Assembly: GCA_054661495.1 (NCBI GenBank)
Contig: BAAFSQ010000502.1
Location: forward strand, 1-5,125
DNA length: 5,125 bases
Reading direction: 5' to 3'
Source of the DNA: Zygophlyctis sp. KS116
Lineage: Eukaryota > Fungi > Chytridiomycota
The notes under the pieces were generated by a model that did not search any database, was not told where the DNA came from, and worked only from the letters and a program-made list of their open reading frames with translations. The stretch's first letter is position 1, and every line of letters starts with the position of its first letter. Below are positions 296-4,951 of this stretch, one piece after another. Made by a program: the position numbers and the translations under genes.

Positions 296-514
296 TATCA
301 TGGCCAATCTCTCGGCCTGAGTTGTTTTTGGTCCTCGGCCCATTACAAAATAAAATCAAAATAAAATATATAGAAAGAAATATAAAGCTCCGAAATTGTA
401 GCTTTAATTTTTGCATTATTTTTGATAAATAACGCGGAAATCCGGCGAAATAAAAGCACGTTAAATCATAAAAAGAACCGCGTTTTTTCATATTTGAAAC
501 CCCCTAATGGAATC

Positions 515-565
515 AACTGAACATTCCTTTTGACTTTGTTCTTGTCCTTCAATAAACGAGTCTAT
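515..565 (-). repeat. 51-bp dispersed copy of 4622-4672 (coding fragment IDSFIEGQEQSQKECSV)
   Basis: Ungapped alignment at offset 4107: 45/51 identical, all 6 differences are transitions, 5 at third codon positions of the minus-strand frame. Confidence 0.9.
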
Positions 566-600: not shown

Positions 601-838
601 AGATACTTTGACATCATTATTCAATTAATAATAAGCTCTGTTATCGGCTGGCATACAACGAAAAAACAATTAAATTCATTACCAGGACTATTTGGATATC
701 CGAAAGGTTATTTGGTATCTCCTGAATCGCAAAAATTATGGAAATCTTCACGCGCACATGTTGATTTGGATCCATGGTTTACCTGCCACAGCATCTCAAT
801 ATAAATTGATATCTGAAAGTGATGATAGATTAGTTCTA
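601..838 (+). pseudogene. Helitron-type Rep (HUH endonuclease) fragment, end of motif I through motif II
   Basis: Frame 1 from 601 gives RYFDIIIQLIISSVIGWHTTKKQLNSLPGLFGYPKGYLVSPESQ; removing one A from A5 at 731-735 continues as NYGNLHAHMLIWIHGLP, matching the Helitron Rep pattern R(Y/F)F...G(L/I)FG...Y....ExQxRGxLHxHxLxW. Confidence 0.85.
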
Positions 839-1450
839 TATACAAATAATCTTATTCATGCACTCACCCAATTATCTCAGGTTGAACATCGCAATTTATC
901 AGCGTATCATCCTCGTGCTAACCCAGTGGAACGTCAAAATCACACGATCTTGTCTGTAATAAGAAAGTACTTAAATAGAAACATCGATTGGTGTTTATGG
1001 ATTCCGTGGATTCAGTTTTGCGTGAATGCTCACGTATCACAAGCCACAGGATCTACTCCTTTTTCCTTGATGTTTGGTCGATCTAGTATTCCTTTGCCTG
1101 ACAATTTTTATGAAAATCACCCCTCAGATGGGGTGAAGTGGAAAGAAAGATTGAAAGAACTCAATGAATTAATTTATCCCGCAATATCTGATCGCATAAA
1201 ATCTATTCGGGCTAAAGCAGCTGCTGCTTTCAAAAATCGCAACTTGATTATCAACAATCCGTATCCGGTAGGATCTATTGTTAATGCTGATAACAATACA
1301 CGCCAACAGAAATTGGAAGCAATCTATGGACCGTTTACTATATGCCATGTTAACAGAAATAACTCATATAATCTTATTGATCGAGCTGGTAATGTTAAAG
1401 AAAAAATTCCTGTCTCTCACCTCAGACTTATTTCCAAAATTCCAAATGAT
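839..1450 (+). pseudogene. pol: Ty3/Gypsy integrase, C-terminal half (within track ORF 692..1561)
   Basis: YTNNL...EHRNLSAYHPRAN-PVERQN (catalytic E region), W...IP.IQF.VN...S.ATG.TPF.LMFGR, and GPY/F module YPVGS...KLEAIYGPF...SYNL...PVSHLR. The HHCC finger and first two catalytic Asp are absent; single codons appear lost in ANGxVER and YxGPF. Confidence 0.9.
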
Positions 1451-1637
1451 AATAGAATCAAAAATCGAGCTATTGAGCAGAATTTGGGATTGTGCAAAAT
1501 GGGCTATTTAATGATTTGTTTTGTAGATAATCTTACCTCGAATTGTCTGAGATCAGGTTAGAGAGTACTGGGGAAAGTAAACTGACCTGATTCACCAGTC
1601 GCTGGCAAAGGTAGGGTCGGTTGTATGAGGAAAGTTG
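1448..1637 (-). pseudogene. pro: Gag-pro linker and N-terminal piece of aspartic protease, truncated before the catalytic Asp
   Basis: The gag frame continues past TGA for 34 codons to TAA (1535-1533), then DYLQNKSLNSPFCTIP; dropping one A at 1484 gives ILLNSSIFDSII, the register of IPIxxNxxxxxALV that precedes D(S/T)G. D(S/T)G itself is absent. Confidence 0.5.
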
Positions 1638-2818
1638 TCAGTTCACTCTTTTGGATTCTGAGGTGCAAGTATGATCTTTTGACCATGGGGAACCACACTT
1701 ATAGCAGTTTTTTTTAAGGGTCGATGGTGGTAAGTTAGGTGGCTTACTTTGAGGCGTTGGATTCCGGCACTCGCTGTTTAAGTGTCGTGCTTCGGGGTGC
1801 ACTTGACAGCGATCCGTTGGTTTACTTCCTACAGCAGGTAGACGAGGAGCTGAACTGTTGGGACGCCGATCTTGGGATCGACCATATGAATCAGGCTGGT
1901 GATCATGCCGATCCATACTTTTGGCGAATGCTACGATTTGAGGAAAACTGTCGATAATTTCAGTACGACGAGCTAGGGGTAAGGCGTATGTTATGTTCCA
2001 GGGTAGTTTAGATTCAATAGAAGCCGAGTATTGATCAGGTGGATCACCCGAATGAGCCACAAACAGGCTGAAACGATCACAAAAATCAGTGATTGATTCT
2101 GATTTGCTAATTGAGAGGTTGTGGATCTTGCTTCTAAGCGTGGATTTCCATTGGGAACCCATGCGATCATGAATGAAGGCGCGGGACAAATCATTCCAAG
2201 ATGTCGTATCTTCCAGCAATTTGTTCACACTCTCCCTGAGGGAGGGATCTTTCTTGAAAGAAAACTTAAAAACCCGTTTGCGTAAAATTTTGTCACTTAA
2301 ATCAAAAGAGAAACCATCACAGGTCTTTTTAAAGTCGTTTAAGAACAGGAGAGGATCATGCCCAGACTGCCACAGAGGAAGCTTGTCCAGGAGGGAAAGG
2401 ATTCTATTCTCTGTGGAGAAGGTAGTAGAAGAGCCATTTGCTGCACTGGACGCTGGAGAAGGGGCAGTTGGAGGTGGAGGCGTATTCCGTTGAGGGCTAG
2501 GAGGGAGTTTCTAGCTGTTGTGATTTGTACCAAAATAGAGTCTACCAGAGAGTTATTTTGGCTTACCACAGCTTGAGCAAGTTCCATTCCAAGCAATTTG
2601 AAATGATTATTGAGGATCACCTCTACAGCGGATGCATGAGGTTGGGTGACAACAGGAAGTGGTGCCATGGGCAAGGGTTGCTGGACAACAGCAGGTAGCT
2701 GAGCAACAGCAGGTAGTTGAGCAACAGCAGCCATATATCTGGTTTGCACACCAGAGACTGGGGCTTCAGAAGAGGACGAAGAGGATTGGTTAGATTGAGA
2801 GTTGTTATCAGAATTCAT
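1638..2818 (-). pseudogene. gag: Ty3/Gypsy Gag, about 393 aa if one frameshift (near 2485) is repaired; joins track ORFs 2339..2818 and 1638..2228
   Basis: The downstream frame is open from 2510 and gives LDKLPLWQSGHDPLLFLNDFKKTC, SWNDLSRAF and ESITDFCDRF (capsid/major-homology-like), then CQVHPEARHLNSEC (1808-1767) and CYKCGSPWSKDHTC (1706-1665). ATG lies 9 nt after the LTR. Confidence 0.88.
2686..2730. repeat. 18-bp tandem repeat x2.5 within gag (AVAQLP)
   Basis: caacagcaggtagctgag / caacagcaggtagttgag / caacagcag. Confidence 0.95.
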
Positions 2819-2827
2819 TGAAAAAAA
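2815..2827 (-). promoter_or_regulatory. Non-tRNA primer-binding site candidate TTTTTTTCAATGA (overlaps the gag ATG)
   Basis: Directly follows the LTR terminal CA; no TGG; complementary to TCATTG (2858-2853) plus a poly(A) tail. Confidence 0.6.
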
Positions 2828-3075
2828 TGTTTTAATCAGACAAGAGCAGAGTCAATGAGACTAAAAGTTTTTTATTGTGTACTAAAAATAGGCTGCGGCA
2901 GTGTTTAAGAATAGCACGCGGCTGCTAACACGTTCTCGAAATAGAGAAGTGTATCTGTAAAAACCTGTGCTCATTTACAGGAAAAAAAAATCTCTTATCA
3001 GTTCGGGCGGCGAGTACTTTAAGTTTTAGGTCGAGGTGCCCAGAGCTTTGTTTAAGTTTAGGTGTTGTTACAACA
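2828..3075 (-). mobile_element. 5' LTR (248 bp, TGTTG...AAACA)
   Basis: TG...CA termini with TGTT/AACA inverted ends; homology to 3765-4005 starts exactly at TGTTG; TATA-like TGTAAATGAG, AATAAA at 2876-2871; gag follows immediately. Confidence 0.85.
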
Positions 3076-3380
3076 GCTTGCCTTGGTAAACTGAGGACAT
3101 TTTGAAATAAAATGACCCTTAATATTGCATTTTCTACATGTATAATTGTCAGGGGGAACATCAGTTGAAGAGGTACGTGTACTGTAAACGTGAAGTGCTC
3201 TGTCTTTATGATTGGGCTTGCCGGAGGCTGTATCTAATTGGTTACCTCTGCATTTAAATTCCTTGTGCCCTCTGTGCTTACCATAATTGCAAACAACCGA
3301 GTTATTTTTTGGCGTGTCTTTTAAAGAATTTTGTTGCTAATATATGTCTTCGCAAGACTTTTGGTAAATGAGATAAGGAC
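3076..3380 (-). pseudogene. gag: Second Gag C-terminal fragment with two CCHC-type zinc knuckles, interrupted by the LTR at 3075
   Basis: One frame gives ...SVVCNYGKHRGHKEFKCRG (3291-3250, second Cys replaced by Gly) ...VPPDNYTCRKCNIKGHFISKCPQ (3138-3097); TAG at 3339-3337. Not in the ORF track because it has no start codon. Confidence 0.8.
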
Positions 3381-3382
3381 CC

Positions 3383-3753
3383 TCTCACAAAATTCTCTAT
3401 GACCCTTACCTCAATGGGTCCTTCGTTATGCGAGTGGAAAAAACGAGAACAGGTGCTTTACAGCCTCGGTTCGAAGGACCCTTTAAGATTCTCAAAAGAA
3501 CTACTAGAGTTCGTATGTGTGACAAGATTCTACTGCAGCTTTAGTTTCACAAAATTCACCTCCGTATCACATCAAGCTGATTTCCCATGCATCAGATTTT
3601 GAGGCTCAATCCTATGAATTGGAAGCTATATTAAATCAGATAAAAGTCGAGAGGTTAAATGAAAAAATTCTTAATTCTAAAATTCCTGAATAAGACAATC
3701 TTGGAGATTACAAGAAAATATTGGAAACGCCTTTCAACGAAAAATTCAAAACT
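3383..3753 (+). pseudogene. pol: Second integrase C-terminus (GPF module) plus decayed chromodomain
   Basis: HKILYDPYLNGSFVMRVEKTRTGALQPRFEGPFKILKRTTR, 1-bp loss at about 3509, then SYV*QDSTAALVSQNSPPYHIKLIS...SYELEAILNQ (chromodomain start, 3613), PE*DN, and KYWKR (YW at 3719-3724) in another frame. Confidence 0.85.
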
Positions 3754-3764
3754 AATGGGAATAA
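3754..3764 (+). promoter_or_regulatory. Probable (eroded) polypurine tract
   Basis: AATGGGAATAA between the chromodomain end and the TGTTG LTR start. Confidence 0.5.
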
Positions 3765-4005
3765 TGTTGAAACAACACCTAAGCCTCAATTTAAGATGAG
3801 GACACCTCAATCTTCAACTAAGAGGACCCGCCGTCCGAAATCCAATTGAATTTTAAGAGCAATCTTTTCCTGTAAATGAGCACTAACTTTTTTCTCTTTC
3901 GAAAACATTCTATTAGCTGCCGCAAGCGATTCTAAAAACATTGCCGCAGTCTATTTTTAGCAACATAAATTTGAGTCTCATTGACTCTGCTCTGATCTGA
4001 TTAAA
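3765..4005 (+). mobile_element. 3' LTR, diverged relative of the 2828-3075 LTR (inverted orientation), terminal CA missing
   Basis: Starts TGTTGAAACAACACCTAA versus TGTTGTAACAACACCTAA; identical blocks of 19 bp (3865-3883 / 2967-2985) and 20 bp (3974-3993 / 2843-2862); similarity ends at CTGATTAAA. Confidence 0.85.
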
Positions 4006-4009
4006 TTGT

Positions 4010-4951
4010 AACTTGCAATGGATTTTAGCTGTTTTTAGTTGATTATTGTTGAGCATTTTGAATATACATTCCAGTTTGTATCATTTGCAATATTGGGACT
4101 TATATATCTGAGATCAATTCGGGAATTTCTATCTAATTGCTCATATCTACTATCTAATTGCTCATATGTGTACTCCGTTTTATTTGGGTTTAAGCATCTA
4201 TAAATGTCAATTAAAGAGCAGCTGTGTCTTAGAAAAGGATTCTTAAATTTCTTTGGGGTGGCTTATGAGCGGTTTCTGTCTAGTTTATCATTCGGACATT
4301 CATTGAGATATCCTTGTTATATTACAGAAAAATTTTATGTTCAAATTCCATTTCAACAGCTCTAATATCAGAAAATATTTTTACCTTTTGGGCTTTCTCA
4401 TCTCTACATTTTTGGTCTATTACTGCCTTCAATCAATAACTCTGCTTCTTTTCTTTTTCTTGGTTCTTTTGGAAATACAAACTTTATTTTCGGATGCTCT
4501 TTCTCAATATGCTTCCTTGACGGTTTCTATAATTTGGTACTTCCTTGGATGTACAGCCAGAATGGGGACAATGATAGTACCCATCTTCTTATAGTCTGAG
4601 AATTTCAAATACGATTGATACGACTGAACATTCCTTCTGGCCTTGTTCTTGTCCTTCAATGAACGAATCTATTAAATTTTCTAAATGTGCACCAGTAGAT
4701 TTAGGTCCTTGATGTAATGTAAATTGTCCTTTGGGATAGTCTAAGTTTAAATCAATTTGATGTTTCCATCCAGATAGCTGATAATGAAGTTTCTTGGACT
4801 AGAATAAGCAATCTCTTTTTCGCGGAGGTGTCAAAATTATACTTTCTTTGGCGCTTATGTAATGGAGTATTTTCCATTCCGATGGCCGTACAAACTCTTG
4901 TGTAAATAAACAATTGAAAAAAGCTCCGACGCGTTCGTTAGGCCATCGGAA
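4010..4951 (-). pseudogene. Decayed gene of unknown family containing a C2H2 zinc finger; boundaries approximate
   Basis: A frame runs from 4951 to about 4540 with only TAG (4801-4799) and TAA (4591-4589); it includes YHCPHSGC (Cys at 4570 and 4555), and after frameshifting RKHIEKEHP (His at 4511 and 4496). The frame is supported by synonymous differences to the copy at 515-565. The part below about 4400 is weakly supported. Confidence 0.55.
4129..4167. repeat. Direct repeat, 18 bp identical, period 21
   Basis: ctatctaattgctcatat at 4129-4146 and 4150-4167; reads YEQLDSR YEQLDR on the minus strand. Confidence 0.95.

What the first reader, a model, noticed from the sequence alone, without database searches (positions are those of the whole stretch)
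2815..2876. LTR retrotransposon apparently primed by its own poly(A) junction instead of a tRNA
Seen: on the minus strand the LTR ends ...GATTAAAACA and is followed by TTTTTTT-CAATGA, with no TGG-type PBS. Inside the LTR, AATAAA (2876-2871) is followed by 18 nt ending in TCATTG, then A (2852). Known: cleavage/polyadenylation usually occurs about 10-30 nt after AATAAA, and minus-strand priming must start right at the LTR edge. Inference: a transcript ending UCAUUG-A(n) pairs over 13 nt with UUUUUUUCAAUGA, with the tail's 3'-OH pointing into U5, the correct geometry for priming strong-stop DNA from a circularised RNA. TCATTGA lies in the longest identical block (20 bp) shared with the diverged second LTR. 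This differs from Tf1 self-priming, which uses the transcript 5' end. Dictyostelium Skipper is known to lack a canonical PBS and I recall T-tract PBSs being noted in Skipper-like elements, so novelty needs a literature check.
Basis: partly seen in the sequence, partly recalled or inferred. Interest (0 to 1): 0.9.

Follow-up and report, generated by a model that had tools for sequence, protein, structure and literature searches.

The report
Retrotransposon primed by its own poly(A) end
A group of LTR retrotransposons has no tRNA primer site; instead it carries a T-run plus a short sequence that co-varies, across a dozen lineages, with the predicted polyadenylated 3' end of its own RNA, which suggests a new way to start reverse transcription.

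Summary

- **LTR edge:** on the minus strand the LTR (3075..2828) ends in ACA. A sister copy with a 5-bp target duplication fixes that edge.
- **What follows the LTR:** T7 (2827..2821), then CAATGA (2820..2815), which holds the gag ATG. There is no TGG-type PBS.
- **Inside the LTR:** AATAAA (2876..2871) lies 19 nt before the A that ends TCATTGA (2858..2852).

The new evidence is comparative. I fetched relatives by protein homology only. In every relative whose left LTR edge could be read and that has the T-run (11 further lineages), the LTR edge is followed by T6-9. These include Rhizopus delemar and Amoeboaphelidium occidentale. In 10 of those 11 lineages, the 5-8 nt after the T-run are the exact reverse complement of an LTR motif at the homologous place. 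The motif differs between lineages (12 states) and always changes on both sides. Combined P is about 4e-12, and there are no wobble pairs.

The LTR supplies only 1-2 A after the motif, so the A-run needed opposite the T-run is untemplated. That fits a poly(A) junction and not Tf1-type 5' priming.

The poly(A) site itself is not mapped; the read data were uninformative. T-rich pseudo-PBSs are already published as unexplained for Skipper and SM-Tcn1. An unchecked note of this scan (s1-559220) proposes the same idea on another piece of this genome.

The parts
2828..3075 (-). 5' LTR of a truncated chromovirus-type Ty3/gypsy element (TGTTG...AAAACA, 248 bp)
   Evidence: The edges are fixed by homologous LTR pairs with a target-site duplication in L012.
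2871..2876 (-). AATAAA, the proposed polyadenylation signal, 19 nt before the proposed cleavage A
   Evidence: AATAAA is kept at 17-19 nt in four of the five lineages in this genome, and AATATA sits at 14 nt in the fifth.
2852..2858 (-). LTR motif TCATTGA, the proposed last bases of R; A2852 is the proposed cleavage/polyadenylation site
   Evidence: it is the exact complement of T+CAATGA. It is invariant in five lineages in this genome and replaced by co-varying motifs in relatives.
2828..2851 (-). Proposed U5 (24 nt, T/GT-rich), ending in the ACA that integrase would use
   Evidence: Its length varies from 15 to more than 90 nt among relatives.
2821..2827 (-). T7 run directly after the LTR edge; proposed to pair with untemplated A's of the poly(A) tail
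   Evidence: T6-9 is present in all 12 lineages.
2815..2820 (-). CAATGA, the complement of the LTR motif; it contains the gag ATG (2818..2816)
2861..2864 (-). TTAG, possible second short helix pairing with CTGA at 2811..2808 across a small internal loop
   Evidence: Duplex prediction. The same arrangement is predicted for Rhizopus and L083 there and read by eye in L081. It is weak or absent in other copies.
2808..2811 (-). CTGA, the partner of the possible second helix
2339..2818 (-). gag ORF, first fragment (159 aa)
   Evidence: 54% identity to the N-terminus of the C465 gag.
1638..2228 (-). gag ORF, second fragment in another frame (capsid plus zinc knuckle); the element is truncated after it
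   Evidence: Retrotrans_gag, E 1e-4, just under Pfam's cut-off.
3765..4007 (+). Second, diverged LTR of a decayed sister element (about 70% identical). The motif TCATTGA is kept at 3978-3984, and the T-run has decayed
3338..3760 (+). Decayed pol tail (integrase C-terminus and chromodomain region, 8 stops) leading into the second LTR

Best explanation
The element is a chromodomain-bearing Ty3/gypsy retrotransposon. I propose that it starts minus-strand DNA synthesis from its own polyadenylated 3' end.

Proposed steps:
1. Transcripts are cleaved about 14-26 nt after an AATAAA-like signal, right after a short LTR motif (here TCATTG-A), and receive a poly(A) tail.
2. [quoted passage not shown]
3. 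It anneals there, in cis or from the co-packaged RNA.
4. The surplus tail is trimmed at the end of the duplex, as the RNase H of Tf1 does for its 5' self-primer.
5. The last paired A primes copying of U5 and R.
6. Later, plus-strand synthesis copies the retained primer, which rewrites the PBS from the LTR motif in each cycle. This would explain why the two always match perfectly.

Shown here: the LTR edge, the T-run, the covarying complement, and the lack of a templated A-run.

Inferred, not shown: the poly(A) site, the trimming step, and the priming itself.
For: 1. **LTR edge.** It lies at ACA, directly (or 2 nt, TC) before the T-run. It is fixed by target duplications in L012 (CTATG) and L096 (GATAC) and by the 3' LTR end in L079. 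By the established logic of retroviral reverse transcription, the primer's 3'-OH sits at this edge, so the primer must end in A's.
2. **Covariation.** There are 12 different motif/complement pairs in lineages fetched by protein homology alone:
   - TCATTGA/CAATGA
   - TCAATTGA/CAATTGA
   - TCACTGA/CAGTGA
   - TCACACGA/CGTGTGA
   - TCGTGA/CACGA
   - CGATCA/GATCG
   - CGTCGA/CGACG
   - GAATTA/AATTC
   - TCGTTA/AACGA (L104 and Rhizopus delemar)
   - TCATCGTA/ACGATGA (Amoeboaphelidium occidentale)
   - TCACAGA/CTGTGA
   - CATTA/AATG (weak)

   Positions 1-5 next to the A:T junction are Watson-Crick in all lineages but one, with 3-4 pair types per position and no wobble. Fisher's combined P is 3.5e-12.
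3. **Untemplated A's.** The LTR encodes only 1-2 A after the motif, while the T-run is 6-9 nt long.
4. **Poly(A) signal.** An AATAAA or one-base variant lies 14-26 nt before the proposed cleavage A in 14 of 17 copies tabulated. The proposed U5 is T/GT-rich.
5. **Duplex energies.** Polyadenylated end against the PBS: -13.7 to -23.9 kcal/mol. The 5' templated copy: -8.2 to -17.6. A12 alone: -0.9 to -3.0.
6. **Not a start-codon effect.** In L079, L081, L083 and L107 the gag ATG lies outside the paired block, so the match is not explained by start-codon constraint.
7. **TSS in Rhizopus.** A TATAAATA box sits about 75 nt upstream of the motif, so the start site is probably upstream of the motif.
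8. **No tRNA.** None of the own-genome loci that contain the 13-mer complement holds a tRNA gene.
Against: - The poly(A) site and the transcription start are not mapped in any lineage.
- Two lake-water metatranscriptome contigs cross gag-PBS-U5 and stop 8 and 17 nt into the LTR, short of the motif. That is what a start site near the motif would also give, although depth was only about 3x.
- A normal long poly(A) tail would leave an unpaired 3' flap, so a trimming step has to be assumed.
- L083 and L096 have no recognisable hexamer, and in Rhizopus the hexamer is 36 nt away.
- The complement in L086 is only 5 bp (P 0.22).
- Spaller et al. (PMC5006619) argued against simple poly(A) priming in Skipper because of a C in the pyrimidine tract. 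Here the C (ACA-TC-T6 in L079, L098, L099) fits the usual 2-nt spacer, but that reading is mine.
Confidence: 0.6

Rival explanations
1. Tf1-type self-priming. The transcript starts at the LTR motif, its first 6-9 nt fold back onto the complement after the T-run, RNase H cuts, and the T-run is only a spacer.
For: The elements are chromoviruses, like Tf1. The LTR-motif/leader pairing is real. The metatranscriptome contigs stop just short of the motif. Unchecked notes of this scan report Tf1-type families in the same genome.
Against: The primer's 3' end would lie at the 3' side of the T-run, so the LTR should end with the T-run. The 3' LTRs in fact end at ACA. Only 15 nt separate the motif from the LTR end in L096, too little for R plus U5. 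This model gives no reason for a T6-9 run conserved in GC-rich hosts. The Rhizopus TATA box is about 75 nt upstream of the motif.
Confidence: 0.1
2. The pairing is real but is not the primer. It could be a leader hairpin or a 5'-3' contact used for packaging, dimerisation or switching off gag translation. Reverse transcription would then be primed by some other RNA with an oligo(A) 3' end, for example any poly(A) tail.
For: Covariation proves pairing, not priming. In several lineages the gag ATG lies inside the duplex, which would suit translational control.
Against: The block is perfect Watson-Crick in all 12 lineages, with no G-U pair. That is what copying from a primer gives and is unusual for a purely structural helix. 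The complement abuts the T-run exactly, so motif plus A-run forms one continuous duplex. A12 alone binds at only -1 to -3 kcal/mol. No other PBS candidate exists.
Confidence: 0.2
3. Priming by a host tRNA or a tRNA fragment (as in Ty3, copia or Ty5) whose binding site was overlooked or lost in this copy.
For: Half-tRNA priming exists in other families. Unchecked notes report it for copia and one Gypsy family in this genome.
Against: No copy or relative has a TGG after the LTR. None of the own-genome loci carrying the complement of the PBS 13-mer holds a tRNA. A host tRNA cannot explain why the site co-varies with the element's own LTR across different hosts.
Confidence: 0.03

Closest known systems
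Tf1/Tf2 self-primed reverse transcription (Schizosaccharomyces pombe; Levin 1995, cited in PMC5006619; details from my own knowledge)
   Same: Both are chromodomain Ty3/gypsy elements with no tRNA primer. The primer is part of the element's own RNA. An LTR-derived sequence is complementary to the site just after the 5' LTR. The primer strand runs on beyond the duplex and has to be cut at its end.
   Different: Tf1 uses the first 11 nt of the transcript (the 5' end of R), and its PBS complement is fully templated. Here the complement corresponds to the proposed last 5-8 nt of R plus 6-9 untemplated A's, that is, the 3' end of the RNA.
Skipper elements of dictyostelids and Protostelium (Spaller et al. 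2016, PMC5006619)
   Same: Both are chromoviruses in which a polypyrimidine tract directly after the left LTR replaces the TGG PBS. [quoted passage not shown] Some tracts carry a C near the LTR side, as in L079, L098 and L099.
   Different: The authors found no complementary region in the left LTR and argued against a simple poly(A) primer. Skipper has two ORFs, whereas the C465 copy has one ORF of 1521 aa. I could not fetch Skipper DNA, so I do not know whether Skipper shows the anchored complement.
SM-Tcn1 and the Tcn1 clade (Novikova et al. 2010, PMC2864245; Neumann et al. 2019, PMC6317226)
   Same: A chromovirus with no PBS found and a 'conservative and thymine-rich' sequence between the 5' LTR and gag, with the mechanism stated to be unclear. 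The Tcn1 clade is predicted to self-prime.
   Different: No poly(A)-junction complement is described there. The relationship to the present clade was not tested.
Target-primed reverse transcription of non-LTR elements such as L1 (own knowledge)
   Same: A poly(A) tail paired with an oligo(T) stretch sets the start point of reverse transcription.
   Different: In L1 the tail is the template and nicked genomic DNA is the primer. Here the tail would be the primer and the element's own leader the template.

Membership tests
Ty3/gypsy chromovirus | gag, protease, RT, RNase H and integrase in that order | tested here: met
   on the intact sister copy (L011, 1520 aa): Retrotrans_gag, RVT_1, RT_RNaseH, Integrase_H2C2 and rve above Pfam's cut-offs, with Asp_protease_2 (20.9 bits against a cut-off of 24.3) between gag and RT. 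The window's gag fragment hits Retrotrans_gag at E 1e-4, just under the cut-off.
Ty3/gypsy chromovirus | Chromodomain at the integrase C-terminus | tested here: met
   PF00385, E 9.6e-6, 25.9 bits against a cut-off of 25.1. Relatives carry PF00385 in the precomputed annotation.
Ty3/gypsy chromovirus | LTRs with TG...CA ends and a short target duplication | tested here: met
   CTATG; GATAC.
Tf1/sushi-type self-primed elements | No tRNA-type PBS; the site after the LTR is complementary to the element's own LTR | tested here: met
Tf1/sushi-type self-primed elements | The complement is the first roughly 11 nt of the transcript | tested here: inconclusive
   The start site is unmapped. The contigs stop 8-17 nt into the LTR. 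The Rhizopus TATA box about 75 nt upstream of the motif argues against it.
Tf1/sushi-type self-primed elements | The templated complement reaches the LTR edge | tested here: not met
   A T6-9 run lies between the edge and the complement, and the LTR has only 1-2 A after the motif.
Skipper-type elements (PMC5006619) | Polypyrimidine tract directly after the left LTR in place of TGG | tested here: met
Skipper-type elements (PMC5006619) | Separate gag and pol ORFs | tested here: not met
   a single ORF of 1521 aa in the intact sister copy.
Skipper-type elements (PMC5006619) | Placement within the Skipper clade on a pol tree | not tested
   No Skipper sequence was available by reference. The nearest named RT hits are Amoeboaphelidium, Rhizopus, Lichtheimia, Absidia and Entomortierella at 44-46%. 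The integrase also hits Planoprotostelium at 41%.
tRNA-primed LTR elements | PBS starting with TGG, complementary to a tRNA 3' end | tested here: not met

The most novel reading that the evidence does not exclude
A fourth way of priming LTR-retroelement reverse transcription, alongside the tRNA 3' end, the tRNA half and the transcript 5' end. In this reading the junction between R and the poly(A) tail of the element's own RNA is the primer, and it rewrites the PBS in each cycle. The mechanism would be shared by a chromovirus clade spread over fungi, aphelids and uncultured protists, and it may be the answer to the unexplained T-rich 'PBS' of Skipper and Tcn1.
Probability: 0.55. Interest if true: 0.85.

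Novelty: new variant of a known kind. Interest (0 to 1): 0.8.

Why it matters
How reverse transcription is primed is a defining trait of retroelement lineages. Only tRNA-based priming and Tf1-type 5' self-priming are established for LTR elements.

T-rich tracts in place of a PBS have been reported twice as unexplained (Skipper in 2016, SM-Tcn1 in 2010). The covariation found here gives a concrete and testable answer: the primer is the polyadenylated 3' end.

If correct, three things follow:
- Polyadenylation site choice becomes directly coupled to replication.
- Placing the gag start codon in or next to the primer duplex provides a built-in switch between translation and reverse transcription.
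- LTR-annotation tools could use a simple rule to recognise this clade: T-run plus the complement of the sequence before the poly(A) site.

The same architecture occurs in Rhizopus delemar and Amoeboaphelidium occidentale, which can be cultured, so the claim can be checked with ordinary RNA-end mapping.

Tried and rejected
**Hypotheses tested and set aside**
- **tRNA or tRNA-half primer.** I suspected the tRNA-Phe anticodon loop by eye. The 13-mer complement occurs 21 times in the genome, none of them in a tRNA gene. Rejected.
- **Longer LTR containing the gag ATG.** This was prompted by C465, where the 3' LTR is followed by the PBS and about 110 nt of gag. It is rejected by the C152 copy, whose 3' LTR ends at ACA before a duplicated CTATG.
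- **TCATTGA...T7 as a general feature of the genome.** The other pattern hits are unrelated repeats or chance, with no complement after the T-run.

**Searches that gave nothing usable**
- **Direct mapping of RNA ends.** The only runs holding the element were lake-water metatranscriptomes kept as contigs. Eleven short contigs at 99% identity or more were laid, none on the 3' LTR, and there were no loose ends.
- **Polyadenylated LTR retrocopies in this genome.** The pattern TCTCATTGAAAAA gave 2 hits, about the chance level, and their context was unreadable.
- **More families from this genome** (C159, C544 and others). I did not try to get the letters another way.
- **Viral contigs.** No relatives.
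- **Six Logan contigs (L107-L112) as possible transcripts.** They break at a (CA)n repeat in U5, not at RNA ends.

**Loci that could not be assessed**
- L078, L080, L082 and L084-L095 (other than L086) lack the 5' junction.
- L101 is distant and no LTR was found.
- L106 has no T-run and its LTR is undefined.

**Procedural notes**
I redid it with coordinates and references only.
- I built no consensus and repaired no reading frame.

Full report
**1. What is in the window**

The window (contig C502 of a 12.7-Mb, 1175-contig assembly) is a pile of decayed Ty3/gypsy pieces.
- On the minus strand, a 248-bp LTR (3075..2828, TGTTG...AAAACA) is followed by T7 (2827..2821) and CAATGA (2820..2815).
- The ATG at 2818..2816 opens a gag reading frame. 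It survives as two fragments (2818..2339 and 2228..1638) and is then cut off.
- On the plus strand, a decayed pol tail (3338-3760, eight stops) runs into a second LTR that is about 70% identical (3765-~4007).
- An integrase of a different Gypsy family occupies 692-1561.

That includes AATAAA at 2876..2871, the 18 nt ending in TCATTG, the A at 2852, and the 20-bp block shared by the two LTRs.

**2. The LTR edge is secure**

The same genome holds sister elements.
- **C152 (L012):** two 259-bp LTRs, 99.6% identical and flanked by the 5-bp duplication CTATG. The 3' LTR ends ...AAAACA directly before the flank. The 5' LTR is followed by T7-CAATGAATTC.
- **C465 (L011):** an uninterrupted ORF of 1521 aa (gag, protease, RT, RNase H, integrase, chromodomain). 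The ORF starts 10 nt after a 252-bp LTR.

The T-run is therefore outside the LTR, and the LTR ends at the CA immediately 5' of it. In retroviral-type reverse transcription the LTR's U5 edge marks where the primer's 3'-OH sat, give or take the two bases removed by integrase (established knowledge). A primer bound here must end in a run of A.

**3. Within this genome the two motifs are invariant**

Five lineages were compared: the window, C152, C465, C279 and C568. Their LTRs are only about 70-75% alike or unalignable. All five keep CTCATTGAC 18-29 nt before the LTR end and T7-8-CAATGAA after it. That is conservation, not covariation. Because CAATGA contains the start codon, it could be coding constraint.

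**4. Relatives from elsewhere show covariation**

I fetched relatives by protein homology only (integrase, RT), so the choice was blind to the nucleotide motifs. Every relative whose left LTR edge could be read and that carries the T-run has ACA (or ACA-TC, or CA) followed by T6-9. In all but one (L086, below), the bases after the T-run are the exact reverse complement of a motif inside the LTR. That motif ends in A and sits at the homologous place, often behind a conserved GTCTC.

| Lineage | LTR motif | After the T-run |
|---|---|---|
| This genome (5 lineages) | TCATTGA | CAATGA |
| L079 | TCAATTGA | CAATTGA |
| L083 | TCACTGA | CAGTGA |
| L081 | TCACACGA | CGTGTGA |
| L096/L097 (duplication GATAC) | TCGTGA | CACGA |
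| L098 | CGATCA | GATCG |
| L099 | CGTCGA | CGACG |
| L100 | GAATTA | AATTC |
| L104, and two copies in Rhizopus delemar RA 99-880 (L102, L105) | TCGTTA | AACGA |
| Amoeboaphelidium occidentale (L103) | TCATCGTA | ACGATGA |
| L107-L112 | TCACAGA | CTGTGA |
| L086 (5 bp only, P 0.22) | CATTA | AATG |

Sources.

The first five positions next to the A:T junction are Watson-Crick in all lineages but L086. Each position shows three or four different pair types. There is not one G-U pair inside the block.

An anchored test asked for the longest complement that starts at the last T of the run and lies in the last 130 nt of the LTR, compared with 20,000 shuffles. It gives P 0.0009-0.056 per lineage. 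Fisher's combined P over the 12 states is 3.5e-12.

In L079, L081, L083 and L107 the gag ATG lies outside the paired block, so start-codon constraint does not explain the match.

**5. Which RNA end carries the complement**

After the motif the LTR encodes only one or two A's and then unrelated sequence, yet the T-run is 6-9 nt long. The only RNA that reads motif followed by an A-run is a transcript cleaved and polyadenylated right after the motif. Supporting points:
- AATAAA or a one-base variant lies 14-26 nt before that A in 14 of the 17 copies tabulated. It is 36 nt away in Rhizopus, and L083 and L096 have none.
- The stretch between the motif and the LTR end is T/GT-rich, as downstream elements of poly(A) sites are (my reading).
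- Predicted duplex energies are -13.7 to -23.9 kcal/mol for the polyadenylated end against the leader. They are -8.2 to -17.6 for the templated 5' copy and -0.9 to -3.0 for A12 alone. A tail alone would not bind; the motif gives specificity.

Tf1-type priming from the transcript's 5' end fits less well:
- It would put the primer's 3'-OH at the 3' side of the T-run, so the LTR should include the T-run. It does not.
- In L096 only 15 nt lie between the motif and the LTR end, too little for R plus U5.
- Rhizopus has a TATAAATA box about 75 nt upstream of the motif.

In L079, L098 and L099 a C lies in the tract (ACA-TC-T6). This fits the usual two-base spacer between the integrated LTR end and a PBS. 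It therefore need not argue against an A-tail primer, as was suggested for Skipper (PMC5006619). That is my inference.

**6. Mechanism proposed**

Shown: the LTR edge, the T-run, the covarying complement, and the absence of a templated A-run.

Inferred:
1. Cleavage and polyadenylation occur at the motif.
2. The 3' end anneals to the leader.
3. The surplus tail is removed at the end of the duplex, analogous to the RNase H cut that makes the Tf1 primer.
4. The primer is extended through U5-R.
5. Plus-strand synthesis copies the retained primer, so the PBS is rewritten from the LTR motif in each cycle.

The last step would explain the flawless, wobble-free match in every lineage.

**7. What the reads said**

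Five lake-water metatranscriptome runs hold 5-14% of the words of the C465 element. I laid four of them; eleven contigs of 150-436 nt match at 99% or more. Two contigs cross gag, the PBS and U5 and stop 8 and 17 nt into the LTR. None lies on the 3' LTR, and there are no A-tailed loose ends. This shows that the organism or its element occurs in lake water and is probably transcribed. It cannot place either RNA end. If anything, the two stops mildly favour a start site near the motif.

**8. Literature**

- Spaller et al. 2016 (PMC5006619) report that Skipper elements of dictyostelids and Protostelium replace the PBS by a polypyrimidine tract. [quoted passage not shown]
- Novikova et al. 2010 (PMC2864245) report a conserved thymine-rich leader and no PBS in SM-Tcn1, 'mechanism unclear'.
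- Neumann et al. 2019 (PMC6317226) predict self-priming for the Tcn1 clade.
- Full-text searches for poly(A)-tail priming of LTR elements returned nothing else.

The T-tract is therefore known, and the poly(A)-junction explanation with covariation appears to be new. Within this scan, an unchecked note (s1-559220) proposes the same idea for another piece of this genome. Another note (s1-545165) records the start codon inside the duplex on this very stretch.

**9. Verdict**

- Confidence in poly(A)-junction self-priming: about 0.6.
- Regulatory pairing with another primer: about 0.2.
- Tf1-type priming: about 0.1.
- tRNA priming: about 0.03.

Limits:
- Lineages are related by descent, so the P-values measure the fit of each current state, not a count of independent events.
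- LTR edges in L100, L102, L104, L103 and L107 are inferred from the CA-plus-T-run pattern or from copy comparison, not from LTR pairs with duplications.

Noticed in passing
L011 (contig C465) 620-1020, minus strand: The 3' LTR of the intact sister element is followed not by flank but by T8, CAATG and about 110 nt of gag identical to the 5' copy. The sequence then switches into a host-like ORF with tandem repeat units. This could be a partial tandem, an aberrant cDNA end, or a mis-join in the assembly. The window's second LTR is likewise followed by a decayed CAATGG.
   Followed up: partly
window 507-565 and 4614-4672: A direct repeat of 59 nt (85% identical) 4.1 kb apart brackets the whole pile of elements. 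It may be the remains of an older element's LTRs or a duplicated flank.
   Followed up: no
window 692-1561 (+): An integrase ORF of a different Gypsy family (31% identical to the C152 integrase) ends close to where the minus-strand gag is cut off. This suggests nested or abutting insertions.
   Followed up: no
LTR motif region in the window (2859..2862 minus), L083, L081, L104, L102: A conserved GTCTC (or TCTC) precedes the variable paired bases in lineages as far apart as this genome and Rhizopus. In some lineages a second 4-bp helix (TTAG/CTGA, TCGG/CTGA, CGGG/CCCG) flanks a small internal loop. This may be a recognition structure for the RT/RNase H.
   Followed up: partly
L107-L112 (Logan contigs from six runs): This family carries a (CA)n microsatellite inside the proposed U5, where all six assemblies break. 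The proposed U5 is therefore more than 90 nt long and variable in length.
   Followed up: no
L106 (Entomortierella parvispora) 2500-3500: The leader region of this related chromovirus has no T-run but has two long C-runs. Its LTR could not be defined, so I cannot say whether it uses another primer.
   Followed up: no
L011:700-5780 against runs X1-X4: Contigs at 99% identity or more to the intact element occur in four separate lake-water metatranscriptome studies. This points to a freshwater, probably fungus-like host; the nearest named RT hits are aphelid and Mucorales.
   Followed up: partly
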